A DNA stretch of 64,000 bases, from the IMG/VR virus record IMGVR_UViG_3300029267_004162, positions 198,651 to 262,650 of that record; one strand, 5' to 3'. Below the pieces are notes generated by a model. It searched no databases. It saw only the letters and a program-made list of their open reading frames with translations, and was not told the origin of the DNA. Shown here piece after piece: positions 10,983-60,045 of the stretch. Positions within the stretch are counted from its first letter, which is position 1; every line of letters starts with the position of its first letter. A program made the position numbers and the translations under genes.

Positions 10983-11198
10983 ATGAAGGCCGGTACACCC
11001 CCAGAACGGGTGGCGGCGGAGGGCATTACTCTTTGTAAGAGTGTTAGGTGTCCCCTTCGTCAAAAATGTGACAGGTGGTCTGCGGGAGAGTTCCAGGAGC
11101 GAGAATGTACTTTCTACGTTCGTGATCCCTGCAATCTTCAGACCGGAAAATGTACTTTTTTTCTCGCGCGGGTGTCTCGCAAGGCGGAGGAGGTGTAA
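10983..11198 (+). CDS. small Cys-rich hypothetical protein
   Basis: 71 aa with six Cys; GGAGAGG RBS. Confidence 0.6.
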   Translation: MKAGTPPERVAAEGITLCKSVRCPLRQKCDRWSAGEFQERECTFYVRDPCNLQTGKCTFFLARVSRKAEEV

Positions 11199-11199
11199 A

Positions 11200-12294
11200 T
11201 TGCATGTCGCCCTGTCAGTAGCAGAATTGGCTCCTGTACTCCAGGTGTTGGTTAAATTTTCATCATCACGTCATCAGTTAATTGATATCAAGGCCAATTC
11301 AGGCATAACCACTATTGGCTGTGCGGATGGTGATTTTGCTACTTCGTTTCAGACGGATAAGTCGTTTATCCGCAACGAAGGGCAAGCGGCTGTTTCTTTT
11401 GACTCCTTTTACAAGATTATTGGGAGTTTACCCCGGGGTGGCGTGGTGGACCTTCACACGTTTGCTGATGTAATGGAGGTCCGGTCGAATGGCGTTGTGT
11501 TTACACTCCTTAAAGATGATTGTCCTGGTTCCTTCCCTCCAGAAACGGGCACTCACCCTTCTCTTAGGATACAAGGGGCCGTGCTTCGACACATGGTCCA
11601 ACAGGTCATATACGCCGCCGGTTCCGTGTGTTACCAAGGGCACCCACTTTGGGGAATACTCTGGCAACAGGAGTCCGAGCAGTTACAACTGGTCGCGACG
11701 GACACCAAACGCATAGCTCTGGCTTCTGGTACCCCCGTTGAGGGAAAGAAGTTGTCGGCTATCGTGCCTAAAAGGATCCTCGAAGTCTTCAGCGATATCG
11801 AAGGAGACGAGATCGCGGACGTTTTCTTTTATAAGGCGGGAGTTTCTATTCGGGTAGGGCCATATGAGTTCTCATCCCGTTTACTCCTGGGAGATTTCCC
11901 TGATTGGCAATCCAAGATTCCGGTGGGGAAAGCAAAAACTTATGCTACTTTTGATCGACTCCCCCTGTTGGAATCGTTGGTGTCTTTTAAGGCGGTGGGA
12001 GTAGACAATGGCGTTTTCGATTTTCGGGAAAACGGGACGACCATCGCGGGTGTTCTTATATCTGGTCCTGTTTCTGACTTCTGCCCTGTTTCTACAGAGA
12101 CGCCTGTTCACTTAGCGGGTGACGCTGTTGAAATCCTTCTGAACGTCAAATATCTTCGGGAGTTTGTTCAAGCCTTGGATGCTCCTAAAGTCGTGATTGG
12201 TTTGAGTGGTCCCAACAAGCCTATCACTGTTGGAAGTAATTTGATCGATATTATGGGAGTAATTGCTTCCTGCAATGCGGGTGAAGACGAATGA
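11200..12294 (+). CDS. dnaN: DNA polymerase III beta sliding clamp-like protein
   Basis: VATDTKRIA, SRLLLGDFPDW, LNVKYLREF and GPNKPI motifs of beta-clamps; probable TTG start at 11200 after GGAGG. Confidence 0.85.
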   Translation: MHVALSVAELAPVLQVLVKFSSSRHQLIDIKANSGITTIGCADGDFATSFQTDKSFIRNEGQAAVSFDSFYKIIGSLPRGGVVDLHTFADVMEVRSNGVVFTLLKDDCPGSFPPETGTHPSLRIQGAVLRHMVQQVIYAAGSVCYQGHPLWGILWQQESEQLQLVATDTKRIALASGTPVEGKKLSAIVPKRILEVFSDIEGDEIADVFFYKAGVSIRVGPYEFSSRLLLGDFPDWQSKIPVGKAKTYATFDRLPLLESLVSFKAVGVDNGVFDFRENGTTIAGVLISGPVSDFCPVSTETPVHLAGDAVEILLNVKYLREFVQALDAPKVVIGLSGPNKPITVGSNLIDIMGVIASCNAGEDE

Positions 12295-12743
12295 TCATCG
12301 CAAAATCGCAATCCATACAGGTCTCTAAGGAAATCCAGCTAGACTACGGTCACACGCTCCCCAATCACTTCAGTTATTGCAATCAGTTCCACGGCCATAG
12401 AGCTAGAGTAGTGGCTCATGTCGAAGGAGAAATCTGTACCAAGCCAGGAGACAGCAGTGAAGGCATGGTCATGGATTTCCGCTTCCTTAAACAAGCTCTC
12501 ATGTCTTTCGTCCACGATAAACTAGATCATGGGTTTGCTATTTGGAAAGACGACCCAGATAGGGATTTTATTATACGACGAAATGAACGGTTTATCATTA
12601 CCGATAAGCCCCCTACCGCAGAGTATCTTGCTCAGTGGGCCTTTGGACAATTGAATCCCCACATACCCAAAGGACTAACTCTGGTTTCGGTGGAGTGGTG
12701 GGAAACCCCAACTTCCTGTGCAACTTGTACAGCAAGAAATTGA
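12291..12743 (+). CDS. queD: 6-carboxy-5,6,7,8-tetrahydropterin synthase
   Basis: GHTL...YCNQFHGH, GMVMDF, LDHG, PTAEYLA and WETPTSCA motifs. Confidence 0.92.
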   Translation: MIIAKSQSIQVSKEIQLDYGHTLPNHFSYCNQFHGHRARVVAHVEGEICTKPGDSSEGMVMDFRFLKQALMSFVHDKLDHGFAIWKDDPDRDFIIRRNERFIITDKPPTAEYLAQWAFGQLNPHIPKGLTLVSVEWWETPTSCATCTARN

Positions 12744-23060: not shown

Positions 23061-23133
23061 AGGACCGTAGCTCAGTGTGCAGAGCACCGCCCTCTTAAGG
23101 CGGGGGTCGCAGGTTCAAATCCTGCCGGTCCTA
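23061..23133 (+). tRNA. tRNA-Lys(CUU)
   Basis: AGGACCG/CGGTCCT, GCTC/GAGC, CCGCC-CTCTTAA-GGCGG, GCAGG-TTCAAAT-CCTGC; D-loop lacks the GG; no encoded CCA. Confidence 0.93.
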
Positions 23134-54976: not shown

Positions 54977-55943
54977 TTTGATTTCGGATGGGGTGCTTAC
55001 TTCAATAAGACCTGATCTATCAGGGGTTAAACGAGCGACCGATTTGTTGACCTATGATATTGCTGGGGAGGAACACCTTGCCCGTCCATTGTATCTTGTT
55101 CATTGGTCCGGGGTGTATCCAGTTTCGCAATTTCTGGGGGTGTTGTCTCTCCCTAGTGCAAGATTAATAGATTACTTTTTGGACAACATCCACGCTCTAA
55201 ATAGTTTAGTTAGCATCGCCAAAAGAAACAGTTTGGATTATTCTTTCGTCTATCAGCCTCTTTCTGTTGACGACACCCCTGTTCGTCATAATGAGGGGGA
55301 TGAGGGAGACAAGTTCCGTCATTGGTATTTCCCTGCTCTCGGTTGGGAAACGTATCTAACATCCAGGGTTTCTAAAACTAGAAAGAAAATCCGGAGGTAC
55401 ATACGAGCGGCTGTGGGGTATGAAGTTCAGGTTTTTGTCAATCAATGGCCGGAGCCTCAACGACCTGTTGATGAAATGTGGGAATTATGTTTACAAAAAT
55501 ACCCCGATTCCTATGAAACGATGGCGGAGCGAGGAGAAATAGGTCATCTTCGTACGTATTTCTCAGCGATAATGGAGAGTGTTGGCACCAACACGCCTGT
55601 ATTCGCCTTCACTTTCTTATTCAAAGATGGCCAATTTGTCGCCGGGGGTTTAGTTCATTACATGACTGTCTTTGGGGAAAAATGGGGGCAATTGATTTTG
55701 GCGATCAGTAAATTTGCTGAGTACCCTGATTCAGGGAACGTTTTAGTTAGTTTGATGTTAAAACAAATTTTAGACGGGGGTTTCGGTGTTCATTACCAAA
55801 CCGACGATTTACCTTGGAAAGAAACGTTGTGGGGTATGTATCCTTTACCCGTGTTTAATATGTGTACTGAACCTGGGTACACAGCCCTTATTGAAGGTAG
55901 AGAAGTAGAATCGTGGGATTATTCCATTAAGGAATATGTGTAA
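54927..55943 (+). CDS. Fem/CelD-like GNAT (Acetyltransf_6-type), paralogous to 52722
   Basis: WETYLTSRVSKTRKKIRR...FKDGQFVAG...SGNVLV.LML....G...WK..W. Confidence 0.6.
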   Translation: MLTFYHLRLSTRFRRCSLISDGVLTSIRPDLSGVKRATDLLTYDIAGEEHLARPLYLVHWSGVYPVSQFLGVLSLPSARLIDYFLDNIHALNSLVSIAKRNSLDYSFVYQPLSVDDTPVRHNEGDEGDKFRHWYFPALGWETYLTSRVSKTRKKIRRYIRAAVGYEVQVFVNQWPEPQRPVDEMWELCLQKYPDSYETMAERGEIGHLRTYFSAIMESVGTNTPVFAFTFLFKDGQFVAGGLVHYMTVFGEKWGQLILAISKFAEYPDSGNVLVSLMLKQILDGGFGVHYQTDDLPWKETLWGMYPLPVFNMCTEPGYTALIEGREVESWDYSIKEYV

Positions 55944-56422
55944 TGCTTCTTCAAGCTACTATTAACGATACACCGGTAGTTGAAAGGCTTGAGAGGGCAG
56001 CCTTTCGAGCCCAATATCATGAACCCGAGAAATATATCAAAAGAATCCTGACCAAGTCAGGATTCGGATGGATTTATCTACAGAGATATGGGGGGTTTAC
56101 TCTTCCTTCGTATCCAGCTTCTCCCTGGGGGGCGGTTGGGTATGTCTTGGGTGAATTTCGATCTGTTAAAAAGGCTCCTGTTTGTCAATTGTTCTCAATA
56201 GGAATCCTCAAATCTTATCGAAATGAGGGTATCGCAGATGAATTGATGAATAAGTTTGAGGAGTCCGCGAGAAAAGAAACGGAAGACATGGTTCTCCAGG
56301 TCAATGTTAAGAACATCGCTGCTCTTAGGATGTATCAAAAGAGAGGATACGTGGTTGACCGATACTTGCCCGATTTTTATTCTGGGGGCGAACACGCTCA
56401 TCAAATGCGTTTGATCCGCTGA
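55943..56422 (+). CDS. RimI-like GNAT acetyltransferase
   Basis: SIGILKSYRNEGIA, LQVNVKNIAALRMYQKRGY......FY..GEHA..M. Confidence 0.88.
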   Translation: MLLQATINDTPVVERLERAAFRAQYHEPEKYIKRILTKSGFGWIYLQRYGGFTLPSYPASPWGAVGYVLGEFRSVKKAPVCQLFSIGILKSYRNEGIADELMNKFEESARKETEDMVLQVNVKNIAALRMYQKRGYVVDRYLPDFYSGGEHAHQMRLIR

Positions 56423-56469
56423 TCTGCTTGAAGTAGAGGCGGACACACACTCTATCAAAGGAGCATACT

Positions 56470-56886
56470 GTGATAACCCAGAAAGACGACCTAGCCAAGC
56501 AAATTACTGCCCTCACCCCCATGGGTGATTCCCAAGAAGTTGATTCCGTCAATCTACCTGCTGTTATTGATGGGATATGGGGTAATGTAGAAACTTTGGT
56601 TGAGAAGTGGAAGGCAGACAAACCTGACGGTGTCATGGGCTTTACTTCTTTTATCTTTGATTCAACCGCTGAACTGATGGGCCTCTTTGATGATGTAACG
56701 GCTTTTATTGGTGTGGAAGATCGAAAGATTTTGGTTGCGGATACCGTTCGCTACATCTACGGGAAGGTTGATCCTGACCTGCCGTGGATTCCAGAGCCTT
56801 TTGAGTCCAAGTTGGAAGCTTATATCATGGACAATATTTGGCCTGCCGTTGTGAATGTACTCTTTGCTCGTTTTGCTAAGAAATAA
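56470..56886 (+). CDS. hypothetical protein
   Basis: 138 aa; GGAG RBS. Confidence 0.65.
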   Translation: MITQKDDLAKQITALTPMGDSQEVDSVNLPAVIDGIWGNVETLVEKWKADKPDGVMGFTSFIFDSTAELMGLFDDVTAFIGVEDRKILVADTVRYIYGKVDPDLPWIPEPFESKLEAYIMDNIWPAVVNVLFARFAKK

Positions 56887-56896
56887 CAGGTCTACC

Positions 56897-56932
56897 TCAT
56901 CCGGCACCCCAATTGATGGTGGTGCCGGATGA
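56897..56932. other. perfect 12-bp inverted repeat (hairpin)
   Basis: TCATCCGGCACC/GGTGCCGGATGA; no clear U-tract. Confidence 0.6.
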
Positions 56933-56953
56933 AGTCCCAATCGGAGGTAACAA

Positions 56954-57430
56954 GTGAAAATAGTCATCTATCCTGATAACATCCTCCGCGTCCCTTGTAC
57001 ACTTGTGGCAGGTCGATTGGTTTCAGACGACATAATTGATCCTATGCTGGCGTTGGCAGGGAAGTTGAAAGCCGCTGGGTTGGCTGCTCCCCAGGTTGGT
57101 ATAAGCGAATCCTTCTTTTTGGCTAAGACAGAAAAAGACTTCGAACTCTTTGTCAATCCCGTCATTACCCCCACTTCTTCATTACAAACAATTGGCCCGG
57201 AGGGGTGTCTCTCCTTTCCTGGAGTAGTAGTTGAAGTTCCTCGTTACACAGAAGTCCGTGTGGAATACACGGATCGAGTTGGCGAATTTCAAACAGTGGT
57301 GTTATCTGGAACAGCAGCTCGTATCATTCAACACGAAAATGATCATCTTCTAGGTAAATTGATAATCGATCATATGAGTTGTTCAGCCAAGATGTTCAAT
57401 TCGGCACTAAAGCGTCTAAAGAGAAAGTAA
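56954..57430 (+). CDS. def: peptide deformylase
   Basis: GLAAPQVG, EGCLSFPG, QHENDHLLG. Confidence 0.95.
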   Translation: MKIVIYPDNILRVPCTLVAGRLVSDDIIDPMLALAGKLKAAGLAAPQVGISESFFLAKTEKDFELFVNPVITPTSSLQTIGPEGCLSFPGVVVEVPRYTEVRVEYTDRVGEFQTVVLSGTAARIIQHENDHLLGKLIIDHMSCSAKMFNSALKRLKRK

Positions 57431-57606: not shown

Positions 57607-57678
57607 AGCCCCGTAGTTCAGTGGCAGAACGCAAGGCTTTGATCCTTGAAGTCGCAGGTTCGAATCCTGCCGGGGCTT
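57607..57678 (+). tRNA. tRNA-Gln(UUG)
   Basis: AGCCCCG/CGGGGCT, GTTC/GAAC, CAAGG-CTTTGAT-CCTTG, GCAGG-TTCGAAT-CCTGC. Confidence 0.93.
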
Positions 57679-58825: not shown

Positions 58826-59152
58826 ATGCCTAAAATGCGTACACCATCGGATACTAACAAGTTGAAATTACGATTTGAGATGGGGCCGGACGGAAAAATG
58901 CGGTTGACTGTCTCAGTCGTTGATTTTCCTGAGTCCACTTCGGTACTCGTCACCACCATAGTGGGGATGGGGGCGCGTCTTGTACTGTTACATCTTCAGC
59001 AAAACGTGAAGGATTGGCAAGAAACTGACGGAGGGTGGGAACGAATTTGGACTAAAGCGGGAATAAGGGAATTCTTGGCACACCAGCTTTTATCGGGAGG
59101 AGACCCCAGCGTAAACAGTCATTACGCAGTTAGTTTGTTGCACGTATTGTAG
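58826..59152 (+). CDS. hypothetical protein
   Basis: 108-aa ORF. Confidence 0.55.
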   Translation: MPKMRTPSDTNKLKLRFEMGPDGKMRLTVSVVDFPESTSVLVTTIVGMGARLVLLHLQQNVKDWQETDGGWERIWTKAGIREFLAHQLLSGGDPSVNSHYAVSLLHVL

Positions 59153-59166
59153 GAGGAGGAGAACTG

Positions 59167-60045
59167 ATGAACACGCTGACGGTTGTCGAGAGGGTGGAAG
59201 CTTTGTGTCAAGATGTCTGCCACCGCCCACAACATGTCTTTATAGCAGAACCAGATCTAGACTTAATTGAACAACTACGCAAAGTAGAGGAGTCGCCTAA
59301 GCAAGACCCGTTTCCTACTTCGATGACTTCTTCTGATGATAAGCTTTTGTTTTGGGTATTCTACGAGTTGTTGGCTGGATCGGTCAACTATTGTTATTGG
59401 GTAGGAAAATCTGAGGTTCGTCCTGGAGGTAGTAGAGCCAGTAAAATGTACGCTTTACTGGATCAGATTTTCGTGGAGGCTCGACAGGACAATACTTCCA
59501 AAAGCCGTATCATTTCGTCTTTTAACCAGGTACTACTAAAGGAAGGCTTTCCTCTTGTAGAGAAGAGATGTCGTCATACCCAAGAAATTACTCCCGAACT
59601 ATGCCAACATGTCTATGAATGTCTGCAACGAGGGGCCTGGGACAACTGCCTTCAAGCTGTCATCACGGCTTGCCCAGGATACGCAGACGATCCTTTTCTG
59701 AAAAGATTGTTCCTGGTCTTCATGCAACTCCACCGTAGGACAAGTCAATTTACTGATATGATGCGGTCTCACGTTCTGGTTCCCGCCGATTATCACGTGC
59801 CCAAGGTGTTGAGGGCTTTGAAAATACTCAGTTACTCAGATGAATTAGGCCATTTGGTGGCGAATTCAATGCCAATTCCATCCGGTTCTTCAATGGAGTG
59901 TGAAATTCGGGCCTCAACTATCTTAGCTTGTCAGCAGTTAGCACTTCAGGCTGGAGTATCGGTGGAACAAGTTGATCGATATTTATGGTATAACAAGTCC
60001 CGATATTCGGCCAATTTTCATCTAACGGTTACCTCGCACTATTAG
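59167..60045 (+). CDS. queuosine-salvage glycosylase/hydrolase-like protein (DUF2419/QNG1 family)
   Basis: NYCYW, DPFLKR, PADYHVPKVLRAL.ILSYS..L...GSSMECEIRASTI.AC...VDRYLW. Confidence 0.8.
   Translation: MNTLTVVERVEALCQDVCHRPQHVFIAEPDLDLIEQLRKVEESPKQDPFPTSMTSSDDKLLFWVFYELLAGSVNYCYWVGKSEVRPGGSRASKMYALLDQIFVEARQDNTSKSRIISSFNQVLLKEGFPLVEKRCRHTQEITPELCQHVYECLQRGAWDNCLQAVITACPGYADDPFLKRLFLVFMQLHRRTSQFTDMMRSHVLVPADYHVPKVLRALKILSYSDELGHLVANSMPIPSGSSMECEIRASTILACQQLALQAGVSVEQVDRYLWYNKSRYSANFHLTVTSHY

What the first reader, a model, noticed from the sequence alone, without database searches (positions are those of the whole stretch)
59167..60045. QNG1/DUF2419-like 7-deazaguanine glycosylase in a phage that also encodes QueD
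Seen: DUF2419-type motifs including ADY, and queD at 12291-12743 beside the beta-clamp. Known: QNG1 releases queuine from queuosine-5'-monophosphate; phage Que genes usually feed 7-deazaguanine DNA modification; some defence systems use QueC-like enzymes. Inference: the phage may make and recycle deazaguanine bases, or this hydrolase may strip deazaguanine marks from host tRNA or defence components. No folE, queC, queE or dpdA is visible in this window.
Basis: partly seen in the sequence, partly recalled or inferred. Interest (0 to 1): 0.6.

Follow-up and report, generated by a model that had tools for sequence, protein, structure and literature searches.

The report
Phage Qng1-like deazaguanine-nucleotide glycosidase
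A 263-kb jumbo phage that carries a full preQ1 (7-deazaguanine) pathway and a TGT-like transglycosylase also encodes a retuned relative of the queuine-salvage enzyme Qng1, which most likely recycles deazaguanine bases from nucleotides; the gene belongs to a large, undescribed, huge-phage branch of that enzyme family.

Summary
ORF 59167-60045 (+), 292 aa, matches Pfam Q_salvage/DUF2419 (60.8 bits against a cut-off of 25). It folds confidently (pLDDT 89). Qng1 crystal structures are its best PDB matches (TM 0.69-0.74), well ahead of Ogg/AGOG DNA glycosylases (TM ~0.4).

The catalytic Asp-Tyr, the HhH Lys, the guanine-edge Asp, the stacking Trp, the general-acid Asn and the C-terminal Tyr with its Glu/His anchors are all kept. 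The queuosine-specific parts are replaced across the family: two of four cyclopentenediol-pocket aromatics, the D69/D207 proton relay and the phosphate contacts.

The window is the last 64 kb of a 262,650-bp phage record. Outside the window, that genome encodes folE, queE, queC, queF, a QueC-like protein and a divergent TGT-superfamily (DpdA-like) transglycosylase.

The protein belongs to a family of at least 610 clusters. All 28 IMG/VR contigs that carry it are fragments of very large phages. It is absent from 50,697 GenBank phages. Of the 28 records, 13 carry que genes, including 9 of the 11 that are 80 kb or longer.

Best reading (about 45%): a 7-deazaguanine (preQ0/preQ1-type) 5'-nucleotide N-glycosidase that returns free base to the transglycosylase. 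This is a new variant of a known kind, and the substrate is untested.

The parts
59167..60045 (+). Qng1-like (Q_salvage/DUF2419) gene, 292 aa (P0001). Key residues are N74, Y77, K179, L183, Q187, R190, D208-Y209, E244, D270, W274, H285 and the C-terminal Y292.
   Evidence: Pfam PF10343 at 60.8 bits. The family profile matches StQng1 over its full length at E 2.8e-22. AF2 model pLDDT 89.3, with Foldseek top hits 7uk3/7u07/7u91/7ugk at TM 0.69-0.74.
59151..59161 (+). Shine-Dalgarno-like run AGGAGGAGGAG, ending 5 nt upstream of the ATG at 59167.
   Evidence: Read directly from the sequence.
12291..12743 (+). queD (6-carboxytetrahydropterin synthase), the only 7-deazaguanine biosynthesis gene inside the window.
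   Evidence: PF01242 at 96.9 bits. The best NCBIfam model is TIGR03367 QueD at 69.7 bits, below its trusted cut-off of 89.
11041..12294 (+). DnaN-like sliding clamp gene directly upstream of queD. It is context only.
   Evidence: NCBIfam TIGR00663 dnaN at E 1.2e-25, below the trusted cut-off.

Best explanation
The gene encodes a monomeric, Qng1-type nucleotide N-glycosidase. It cuts the glycosidic bond of a 7-deazaguanine 5'-mononucleotide, using Asp208 as nucleophile or oxocarbenium stabiliser. Lys179, Tyr77, Tyr209 and the C-terminal carboxylate of Tyr292 would hold the sugar. Asp270, Trp274 and Leu183 would hold the guanine-like base. The queuosine-specific pocket and the substrate-amine proton relay of Qng1 are replaced, so the substrate is probably not queuosine-5'-phosphate. 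It is more likely a smaller or differently substituted deazaguanine nucleotide of the preQ0/preQ1 type, ribo- or deoxyribo-. Such nucleotides would arise when nucleases break down modified phage DNA or host nucleic acids, or when stray modified nucleotides accumulate. The freed base would rejoin the pool made de novo by the phage's FolE-QueD-QueE-QueC-QueF pathway. The phage's TGT-superfamily (DpdA-like) transglycosylase would then insert it. Shown here: family, fold, conserved catalytic residues, altered specificity residues, the phage's pathway genes, and co-occurrence in other phages. Inferred: the substrate, the direction of flux, and that the target of the transglycosylase is DNA.
For: Family and fold: PF10343 above cut-off, full-length profile match to StQng1 at E 2.8e-22, and Qng1 structures as top fold hits (TM 0.69-0.74 against ~0.4 for Ogg/AGOG). 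Catalytic, ribose and base residues are invariant in 78 family members: N74, Y77, K179, L183, D208, Y209, E244, D270 and H285. Y292 is Tyr in 77 of 78. 119 of 120 members end in Tyr, matching the roles assigned in PMC9881137. Q-specific residues are replaced: D207 to Gln in 77/78, D69 to A/N/S/G, W94 to E/D/K, W299 to G/A/S (Arg in this protein), and K233 to Gln in 76/78 (His here); Arg190 is newly invariant. The same genome carries folE, queD, queE-like, queC, queF and a QueC-like gene. It also carries a 622-aa TGT-superfamily protein with DSGGFQ, a catalytic-position Asp and a CxCxxC...H zinc site, whose profile hits ArcTGT at E 9.7e-10. Its homolog in phage Motura sits inside a queC-asnB-TGT-queE-folE cluster. 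Among 28 other viral records with this family, queC is in 7, queD in 10 and any que gene in 13, including 9 of the 11 records of 80 kb or more. The que-positive records are spread over several clades. Only 0.63% of GenBank phages have queC, giving Fisher p 4.7e-10, and p 0.004 at lineage level even with a 5% baseline. In L024, L025, L041 and L042 que genes lie within about 7 kb of the gene. The two most complete relatives have TGT-like ORFs (hhalign 95.5%).
Against: No substrate was tested, and the pocket differences could equally point to guanine or to another base. In this genome the gene lies 47 kb from queD and more than 150 kb from the queC/queF/TGT cluster, among unannotated small ORFs. 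Fifteen of the 28 related records show no que gene, including one of 225 kb, although all are incomplete. None of the 321 queC-positive GenBank phages has this gene, so it is not a general part of phage deazaguanine systems. A phage with a full de novo pathway has no obvious need for salvage. The usual neighbours in other phages are general nucleotide and DNA-metabolism genes such as RNR, a FEN-type exonuclease, LigD phosphoesterase and UvsX. The phosphate-binding residues R80, K233 and Q306 are not conserved at the aligned positions.
Confidence: 0.45

Rival explanations
1. It is a true Qng1. It hydrolyses queuosine-5'-monophosphate released from degraded host tRNA and harvests queuine, either for the phage transglycosylase or to alter Q-modification of host and phage tRNAs.
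For: It has the same Pfam family and fold, and all core catalytic residues are kept. A non-specific Endonuclease_NS gene sits in the que cluster and could help break down host nucleic acids towards nucleotides. The genome carries a Q-family tRNA-Asn(GTT). F49 and Y95 keep two of the four aromatic pocket positions.
Against: W94 and W299 of the cyclopentenediol pocket are lost. D69 and D207, which relay the proton from the Q side-chain amine, are replaced in nearly all members. The Q content of host tRNA is tiny compared with the G content of a 263-kb genome (own estimate). No known DpdA uses queuine (own knowledge). The phage already makes preQ1.
Confidence: 0.15
2. It acts on ordinary guanine nucleotides or exchanges bases at the nucleotide level. 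For example, dGMP plus a free deazaguanine would give deaza-dGMP plus guanine through a covalent Asp-ribosyl intermediate. Alternatively it destroys dGMP. Either way it would remodel the dNTP pool so that modified G enters DNA during replication.
For: In 11 loci the gene directly abuts the ribonucleotide reductase large subunit, with gaps of 11-19 bp in nine of them and one slight overlap. A dATP/dGTP diphosphohydrolase (PF18909), which would make dGMP, is present in 9 of 28 records, often 2-9 kb from queC. Phosphoribosyltransferases sit beside que genes in L024 and L041, and near folE in this genome. Qng1 chemistry retains configuration, which is compatible with transglycosylation. The amine-dependent relay that makes Qng1 reject GMP is gone.
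Against: This genome and the two most complete relatives have TGT-like proteins, which fits the known post-replicative route. This genome lacks PF18909. Qng1 shows no GMP activity. No transferase activity is known in this family.
Confidence: 0.12
3. It acts on a polymer or a defence molecule. It could excise deazaguanine or damaged G from DNA or tRNA, or dismantle a deazaguanine-based host defence component such as QatC- or Cap9-type products.
For: It has the HhH glycosylase ancestry. One of the five Qng1-specific cleft-blocking insertions, the beta4-beta5 hairpin, is shortened by 8 residues. The neighbours in other phages include DNA repair-type genes.
Against: Four of the five cleft-blocking elements are kept. 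The tail ending in the C-terminal Tyr and its Glu/His anchors are conserved in sequence. Qng1 has no activity on full-length tRNA. There was no PADLOC match. Deazaguanine-protein conjugates are amide-linked rather than glycosidic (own knowledge).
Confidence: 0.08

Closest known systems
Qng1/QNG1 (DUF2419, PF10343): Sphaerobacter thermophilus Qng1 (PDB 7UK3, 7U07, 7U91) and human QNG1/C9orf64 (7UGK)
   Same: It has the same Pfam family and the same two-lobe HhH-derived fold (TM 0.69-0.74). The catalytic Asp-Tyr, HhH Lys, general-acid Asn, guanine-edge Asp, stacking Trp and aliphatic residue, and the C-terminal Tyr with its Glu/His anchors are all the same. Four of the five Qng1-specific insertions are present.
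   Different: Identity is only 22-23%, and the protein is about 30 residues shorter, with the beta4-beta5 hairpin shortened by 8 residues. D69 and D207 of the proton relay, W94 and W299 of the cyclopentenediol pocket, and R80, K233 and Q306 of the phosphate site are replaced. Gln187 and Arg190 are new family-wide residues. It is encoded by huge phages rather than by cells, and it sits with que biosynthesis or nucleotide-metabolism genes rather than in a Q-salvage setting.
HhH DNA glycosylases Ogg1, AGOG and archaeal Ogg (e.g. 3N0U, 3KNT, 1XQP)
   Same: The core HhH fold and the invariant Asp/Lys pair are shared.
   Different: These are far weaker structural matches (TM 0.37-0.47, E of 0.05 or more). 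The phage protein carries the Qng1 insertions and the C-terminal tail that in Qng1 fill the DNA cleft.
Phage and bacterial 7-deazaguanine DNA modification systems (FolE-QueDEC(F) plus DpdA; Hutinet 2019, Cui 2023)
   Same: This genome has folE, queD, queE-like, queC, queF and a TGT-superfamily protein, which is the gene set of dPreQ1-type phages.
   Different: No DUF2419, salvage or glycosylase component is mentioned in those papers. No Qng1-like gene is found in any of 50,697 GenBank phages. The TGT-like protein falls below the PF01702 cut-off and is 622 aa long.
Other nucleotide or nucleoside N-glycosidases (QueK, DNPH1/Rcl, PpnN, LOG, MilB/BlsM)
   Same: They carry out the same kind of reaction: release of a base from a nucleoside or a 5'-nucleotide.
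   Different: Their folds are unrelated (Rossmann-type, multimeric; QueK is Ca-dependent) according to PMC9881137.

Membership tests
Qng1/QNG1 (PF10343 Q_salvage) | Sequence match to the family model above the curated threshold | tested here: met
   60.8 bits against a cut-off of 25, covering residues 128-278. The family profile matches StQng1 over its full length at E 2.8e-22.
Qng1/QNG1 (PF10343 Q_salvage) | Two-lobe HhH-derived fold closest to the Qng1 structures | tested here: met
   The AF2 model has pLDDT 89.3. The top 10 Foldseek hits are all Qng1/QNG1 entries at TM 0.69-0.74 and E about 1e-9; the next best are Ogg/AGOG at TM about 0.4.
Qng1/QNG1 (PF10343 Q_salvage) | Catalytic Asp (D231) and HhH Lys (K199) | tested here: met
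   D208 and K179 are invariant in 78 of 78 members.
Qng1/QNG1 (PF10343 Q_salvage) | Ribose pocket (F75, Y232) and C-terminal Tyr carboxylate anchored by E267 and H316 | tested here: met
   Y77, Y209, E244 and H285 are invariant, and Y292 is Tyr in 77 of 78 members. 119 of 120 family members end in Tyr. The tail itself is modelled with low confidence (pLDDT below 50 for residues 290-292).
Qng1/QNG1 (PF10343 Q_salvage) | Guanine-edge recognition (D298) and base stacking (W302, I203) | tested here: met
   D270 is invariant, position 274 is W or F, and L183 is invariant.
Qng1/QNG1 (PF10343 Q_salvage) | Proton relay D69-N72-D207 fed by the amine of the Q side chain | tested here: not met
   N74 is kept in 78 of 78. 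D207 is Gln in 77 of 78. D69 is A/N/S/G, with Asp in only 9 of 78 and Gly in this protein.
Qng1/QNG1 (PF10343 Q_salvage) | Cyclopentenediol specificity pocket (W48, Y93, W94, W299) | tested here: not met
   F49 and Y95 are retained. W94 becomes E/D/K (Ala here) and W299 becomes G/A/S (Arg here). This rests on sequence alignment only; the model coordinates could not be inspected.
Qng1/QNG1 (PF10343 Q_salvage) | 5'-phosphate site (R80, K233, Q306) | tested here: inconclusive
   The aligned positions are E83, H210 and S278 (family D/T/N/S, Q, and K/H/N). A nearly invariant R85 lies two residues away, and the family has Lys at the Q306 position, so a rebuilt phosphate site is possible.
Qng1/QNG1 (PF10343 Q_salvage) | Qng1-specific insertions that block the DNA cleft (beta2-3, beta4-5, beta1/6, alpha12, C-terminal tail) | tested here: inconclusive
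   Four of the five are present in the alignment and model. The beta4-beta5 hairpin is shortened by 8 residues.
Qng1/QNG1 (PF10343 Q_salvage) | Hydrolysis of queuosine-5'-monophosphate to queuine | not testable with these tools
   This needs an enzyme assay with untagged protein.
TGT/DpdA superfamily (the 622-aa ORF at G000:98692-100560, outside the window) | DSGGFQ motif, catalytic Asp and CxCxxC...H zinc site on a TGT barrel | tested here: met
   D148-Q153, D182, D306, C365, C367, C370 and H393 are invariant in 8 homologs. The profile hits ArcTGT 1iq8 at E 9.7e-10, bacterial TGTs at about 2e-3 and bDpdA 7ui4 at 0.029.
TGT/DpdA superfamily (the 622-aa ORF at G000:98692-100560, outside the window) | Pfam PF01702 above the gathering threshold | tested here: not met
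   Only 11 bits at E 0.02, covering the C-terminal region. There was no PHROG or PADLOC hit.
TGT/DpdA superfamily (the 622-aa ORF at G000:98692-100560, outside the window) | Acts on DNA (DpdA) rather than on tRNA | not testable with these tools
   This is inferred only from the rule in Cui 2023 that phage que clusters pair with DpdA, and from the Motura que-cluster context.

The most novel reading that the evidence does not exclude
The huge-phage Qng1-like family is not a hydrolase for salvage. It is a nucleotide-level deazaguanine transglycosylase or dGMP-directed glycosidase. Together with a dGTP diphosphohydrolase, a phosphoribosyltransferase and ribonucleotide reductase, it would build a modified dGTP pool. 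7-deazaguanines would then enter DNA during replication, a route not yet known for these modifications.
Probability: 0.1. Interest if true: 0.85.

Novelty: new variant of a known kind. Interest (0 to 1): 0.6.

Why it matters
Phage 7-deazaguanine DNA modifications protect against restriction enzymes and, in vitro, CRISPR-Cas9 (abstracts listed). They are currently described as de novo base synthesis plus a DpdA transglycosylase, with no step that handles modified nucleotides. A phage branch of the Qng1 family, with its specificity pocket rebuilt and co-occurring with que genes in several lineages of huge phages, would add such a step. It would also show that the Qng1 scaffold has been retuned to a substrate other than queuosine. 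That gives a directly testable enzyme with about 600 natural variants for studying deazapurine nucleotide recognition. It could also serve as a genomic marker for hypermodified DNA in uncultured jumbo phages.

Tried and rejected
- PHROGs, PADLOC and NCBIfam gave no hit for the ORF.
- tblastn against 50,697 GenBank phages found no homolog.
- The pattern-based scan of 185,579 species genomes found only two short MAG contigs. That scan is pattern-limited, so it is weak evidence of absence from cells.
- PF01702 at normal thresholds missed the transglycosylase in this genome and in all 28 relatives. A custom profile was needed.
- The 622-aa protein used as a single query found nothing in the relatives.
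- queF is absent above cut-off in the 28 relatives, and folE is present in only one.
- The TGT-like ORF of G007 has no GenBank phage or Pfam match.
- The promoter scan was at chance level (10 sites against 9.2 expected), so no transcription unit could be defined.
- No RNA runs hold the locus. Read laying was therefore not used, because DNA contigs cannot show expression.
- The second structure job and the complex prediction were not used, because no binding claim is made.
- Rejected idea: that the radical-SAM gene next to RNR is an NrdG activase. Five QueE models score better (8.6e-25 against 4.9e-11).
- Rejected idea: that these phages lack any transglycosylase.

Full report
**1. What is there**

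The window is the last 64 kb (G000:198651-262650) of a 262,650-bp IMG/VR virus record that CheckV rates as complete. The ORF at 59167-60045 (+) encodes 292 aa. It starts 5 nt after an AGGAGGAGGAG run and lies in a tightly packed, co-directional array of mostly unannotated small genes. That array is downstream of a tRNA-Gln, a peptide deformylase and a GNAT acetyltransferase.

The ORF matches Pfam PF10343 (Q_salvage/DUF2419) at 60.8 bits, against a cut-off of 25. It also matches the solved Qng1 proteins directly. It has no PHROG, PADLOC or NCBIfam match. queD at 12291-12743 beside a DnaN-like clamp is also real.

**2. Fold and active site**

A 78-sequence family alignment (A2) gives a profile that aligns over the full length of Sphaerobacter thermophilus Qng1 at E 2.8e-22. 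An AlphaFold2 model built on that alignment has mean pLDDT 89.3 and pTM 0.88. Its ten best PDB matches are all Qng1/QNG1 entries (TM 0.69-0.74, E about 1e-9). Ogg/AGOG DNA glycosylases follow far behind (TM 0.37-0.47, E of 0.05 or more).

I used the residue roles defined in PMC9881137 and the alignments to tabulate the family.

Kept in all 78 members:
- N74 (StQng1 N72, general acid)
- Y77 (F75)
- K179 (K199)
- L183 (I203)
- D208-Y209 (D231-Y232)
- E244 (E267)
- D270 (D298)
- H285 (H316)

W/F274 corresponds to W302. The C-terminal Tyr (Y323) is Tyr in 77 of the 78 aligned members, and 119 of 120 family members end in Tyr.

Replaced:
- D207 becomes Gln187 in 77 of 78 members.
- D69 becomes A/N/S/G.
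- W94 becomes E/D/K.
- W299 becomes G/A/S (Arg271 in this protein).
- K233 becomes Gln in 76 of 78 (His210 here).
- R80 becomes D/T/N/S, although R85 is nearly invariant.
- Q306 becomes K/H/N (Ser278 here).
- Arg190 is newly invariant.

Four of the five Qng1-specific insertions that fill the DNA cleft are present. The beta4-beta5 hairpin is 8 residues shorter.

[quoted passage not shown] GMP is not a substrate. The phage family therefore keeps the machinery for cutting a guanine-like mononucleotide but has lost what makes Qng1 queuosine-specific. This rests on sequence alignment; I could not inspect the model coordinates.

**3. The rest of the genome**

Outside the window, the same genome encodes the following:
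- folE at 169699-170199.
- A radical-SAM protein whose best models are five QueE families (E down to 8.6e-25, against 4.9e-11 for NrdG).
- queC, above the NCBIfam cut-off.
- queF type II, above the cut-off.
- A second QueC-like (QatC-like) protein.
- Two adjacent phosphoribosyltransferases near folE.

The minus-strand cluster at about 97.7-106.8 kb reads, in order: queC, Endonuclease_NS, queF, a 239-aa unknown, the QueC-like gene, a PurD-like ATP-grasp, a TnpB fragment, a 622-aa ORF, and a HAD hydrolase.

The 622-aa ORF scores only 11 bits on PF01702. However, an alignment with seven homologs shows these as invariant: DSGGFQ, LDIP, a catalytic-position Asp, and CxCxxC...H. Its profile hits archaeosine TGT at E 9.7e-10, bacterial TGTs at about 2e-3, and bacterial DpdA at 0.029. 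Its homolog in Achromobacter phage Motura lies inside a queC-asnB-TGT-queE-folE cluster.

The phage therefore has the full gene set for making preQ1 and a TGT-superfamily enzyme to insert it. Whether the target is DNA, as in all phages studied, or tRNA cannot be told here. The genome does carry one Q-family tRNA-Asn(GTT).

**4. The family elsewhere**

The single-sequence word search found three relatives at 34-38% identity. The profile search found 610 clusters of 282-319 aa, nearly all unnamed metagenomic proteins. IMG/VR holds at least 28 contigs that encode one. All are fragments of very large phages, at 4-79% CheckV completeness with lengths up to 248 kb.

There is no homolog in 50,697 GenBank phage records. 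A pattern-limited scan of 185,579 species genomes found only two short MAG contigs. The nearest ESM Atlas cluster is a 278-aa Q_salvage family whose commonest phylum is Uroviricota (TM 0.88).

The papers on phage deazaguanines do not mention DUF2419, salvage or a glycosylase. No paper in the library describes a viral Qng1.

The phage DNA itself is found in sediment and seawater metagenomes from three studies, with no RNA runs.

**5. Context in other phages**

In 11 loci the gene directly abuts the ribonucleotide reductase large subunit, with gaps of 11-19 bp in nine of them. In nine of those loci a rubrerythrin/DUF5661 gene lies just upstream. LigD 3'-phosphoesterase, HNH, a FEN-type exonuclease and UvsX/RecA genes are nearby.

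Gene counts in the 28 records:
- queC: 7 records.
- queD: 10 records.
- Any que gene: 13 records, including 9 of the 11 records of 80 kb or more.

The que-positive records fall in several clades of the protein tree. The baseline for queC in GenBank phages is 321 of 50,697, or 0.63%. This gives Fisher p 4.7e-10 on raw counts. For three of seven collapsed lineages, p is 0.004 even with a 5% baseline. The caveats are that the fragments are incomplete, huge phages may have a higher baseline, and the lineages were collapsed by eye.

In L024/L025 an 11-kb stretch holds a phosphoribosyltransferase, a QueC-like gene, QueD, an intein-bearing protein, the Qng1-like gene, a QueE-like radical SAM and a PF18909 dATP/dGTP diphosphohydrolase. 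PF18909 occurs in 9 of the 28 records, often 2-9 kb from queC, but not in this genome.

The two most complete relatives have TGT-like ORFs with DSGGFQ, LDIP and YDSSG motifs but no visible zinc motif. hhalign gives 95.5% probability. These ORFs have no Pfam or GenBank phage match.

**6. Interpretation**

The most economical reading is a Qng1-type mononucleotide N-glycosidase retuned to a non-queuosine 7-deazaguanine nucleotide. It would return free base to the pool used by the transglycosylase (confidence about 0.45).

The rivals are:
- a true Q-5'-MP hydrolase that harvests host queuine (0.15);
- a guanine-directed or base-exchanging enzyme in a pre-replicative route (0.12), which is the most novel reading not excluded;
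- action on a polymer or a defence molecule (0.08).

The remainder is an unforeseen substrate.

The gene is a member of the PF10343 structural family but fails two tests that define queuosine specificity. I therefore file it as a new variant of a known kind, not as an orthologous Qng1.

Noticed in passing
G000:101223-103932 (outside the window; L010:7224-9933, minus strand): Between queF and the TGT-like gene lie three genes. One is a 239-aa protein with only a weak arylamine N-acetyltransferase-like fold lead. One is a QueC-like (QatC-like) PP-loop protein. One is a 420-aa PurD-type ATP-grasp ligase (E 3.2e-5 to phosphoribosylamine-glycine ligase). PurD acylates a primary amine, so this may add an acyl or aminoacyl group to the aminomethyl group of preQ1, which would be a new hypermodification.
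   Followed up: partly
L024:2021-13242 (IMGVR_UViG_3300013130_002900); the same arrangement is in L025: This compact locus holds a phosphoribosyltransferase, a QueC-like gene, QueD, a 1093-aa intein/HNH-bearing protein, the Qng1-like gene, a QueE-like radical SAM and a PF18909 dATP/dGTP diphosphohydrolase. No detectable TGT is present. It resembles a nucleotide-level (toyocamycin-like) deazapurine route.
   Followed up: partly
L012, L021, L022, L023, L026, L027, L029-L032, L041 (viral loci and one JGI metagenome contig): These loci share a conserved synteny: LigD 3'-phosphoesterase, HNH, rubrerythrin/DUF5661, the Qng1-like gene, then the RNR large subunit, with gaps of 11-19 bp in nine loci. 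A UvsX/RecA-like gene and a KH-domain gene follow downstream.
   Followed up: partly
L051:1240-2658 (+) and L052:676-2073 (-): These are ORFs of 472 and 465 aa with DSGGFQ, LDIP and YDSSG motifs but no CxCxxC zinc motif. hhalign gives 95.5% probability to the TGT-like profile. They have no Pfam or GenBank phage match, so they may be an undescribed DpdA-like subfamily in huge phages.
   Followed up: partly
G000:100572-101111 (L010:6573-7112, minus strand): A 179-aa TnpB/Cas12f-like fragment (OrfB_IS605 plus TNB domain) is inserted inside the que cluster, between the ATP-grasp and the TGT-like genes.
   Followed up: no
G000:104751-105587 (L010:10752-11588, minus strand): A non-specific DNA/RNA endonuclease (Endonuclease_NS, E 9e-40) sits between queC and queF. 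It could help break down host nucleic acids towards nucleotides.
   Followed up: no
G000:172464-173374 (minus strand): Two adjacent phosphoribosyltransferase genes (PF00156, 65.9 and 46.4 bits) lie about 2.3 kb from folE and next to a FEN-type exonuclease homolog.
   Followed up: no
window 57607-57678, window 23061-23133, and G000:198241-198330: tRNA-Gln(TTG) lies 1.5 kb upstream of the gene, and tRNA-Lys(CTT) is also in the window. An unusually long (90 nt) tRNA-Asn(GTT), a Q-family tRNA, lies just before the window.
   Followed up: no
window 55943-57430: The phage encodes a GNAT acetyltransferase (55943-56422) and a peptide deformylase (56954-57430) a short distance upstream.
   Followed up: no
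ESM Atlas structural neighbours of P0001: The URC4/urg3 family (PF07958, DUF1688) of the uracil catabolism pathway matches the Qng1-like model at TM 0.77. This hints that URC4 may also be a nucleotide glycosidase with this fold.
   Followed up: no
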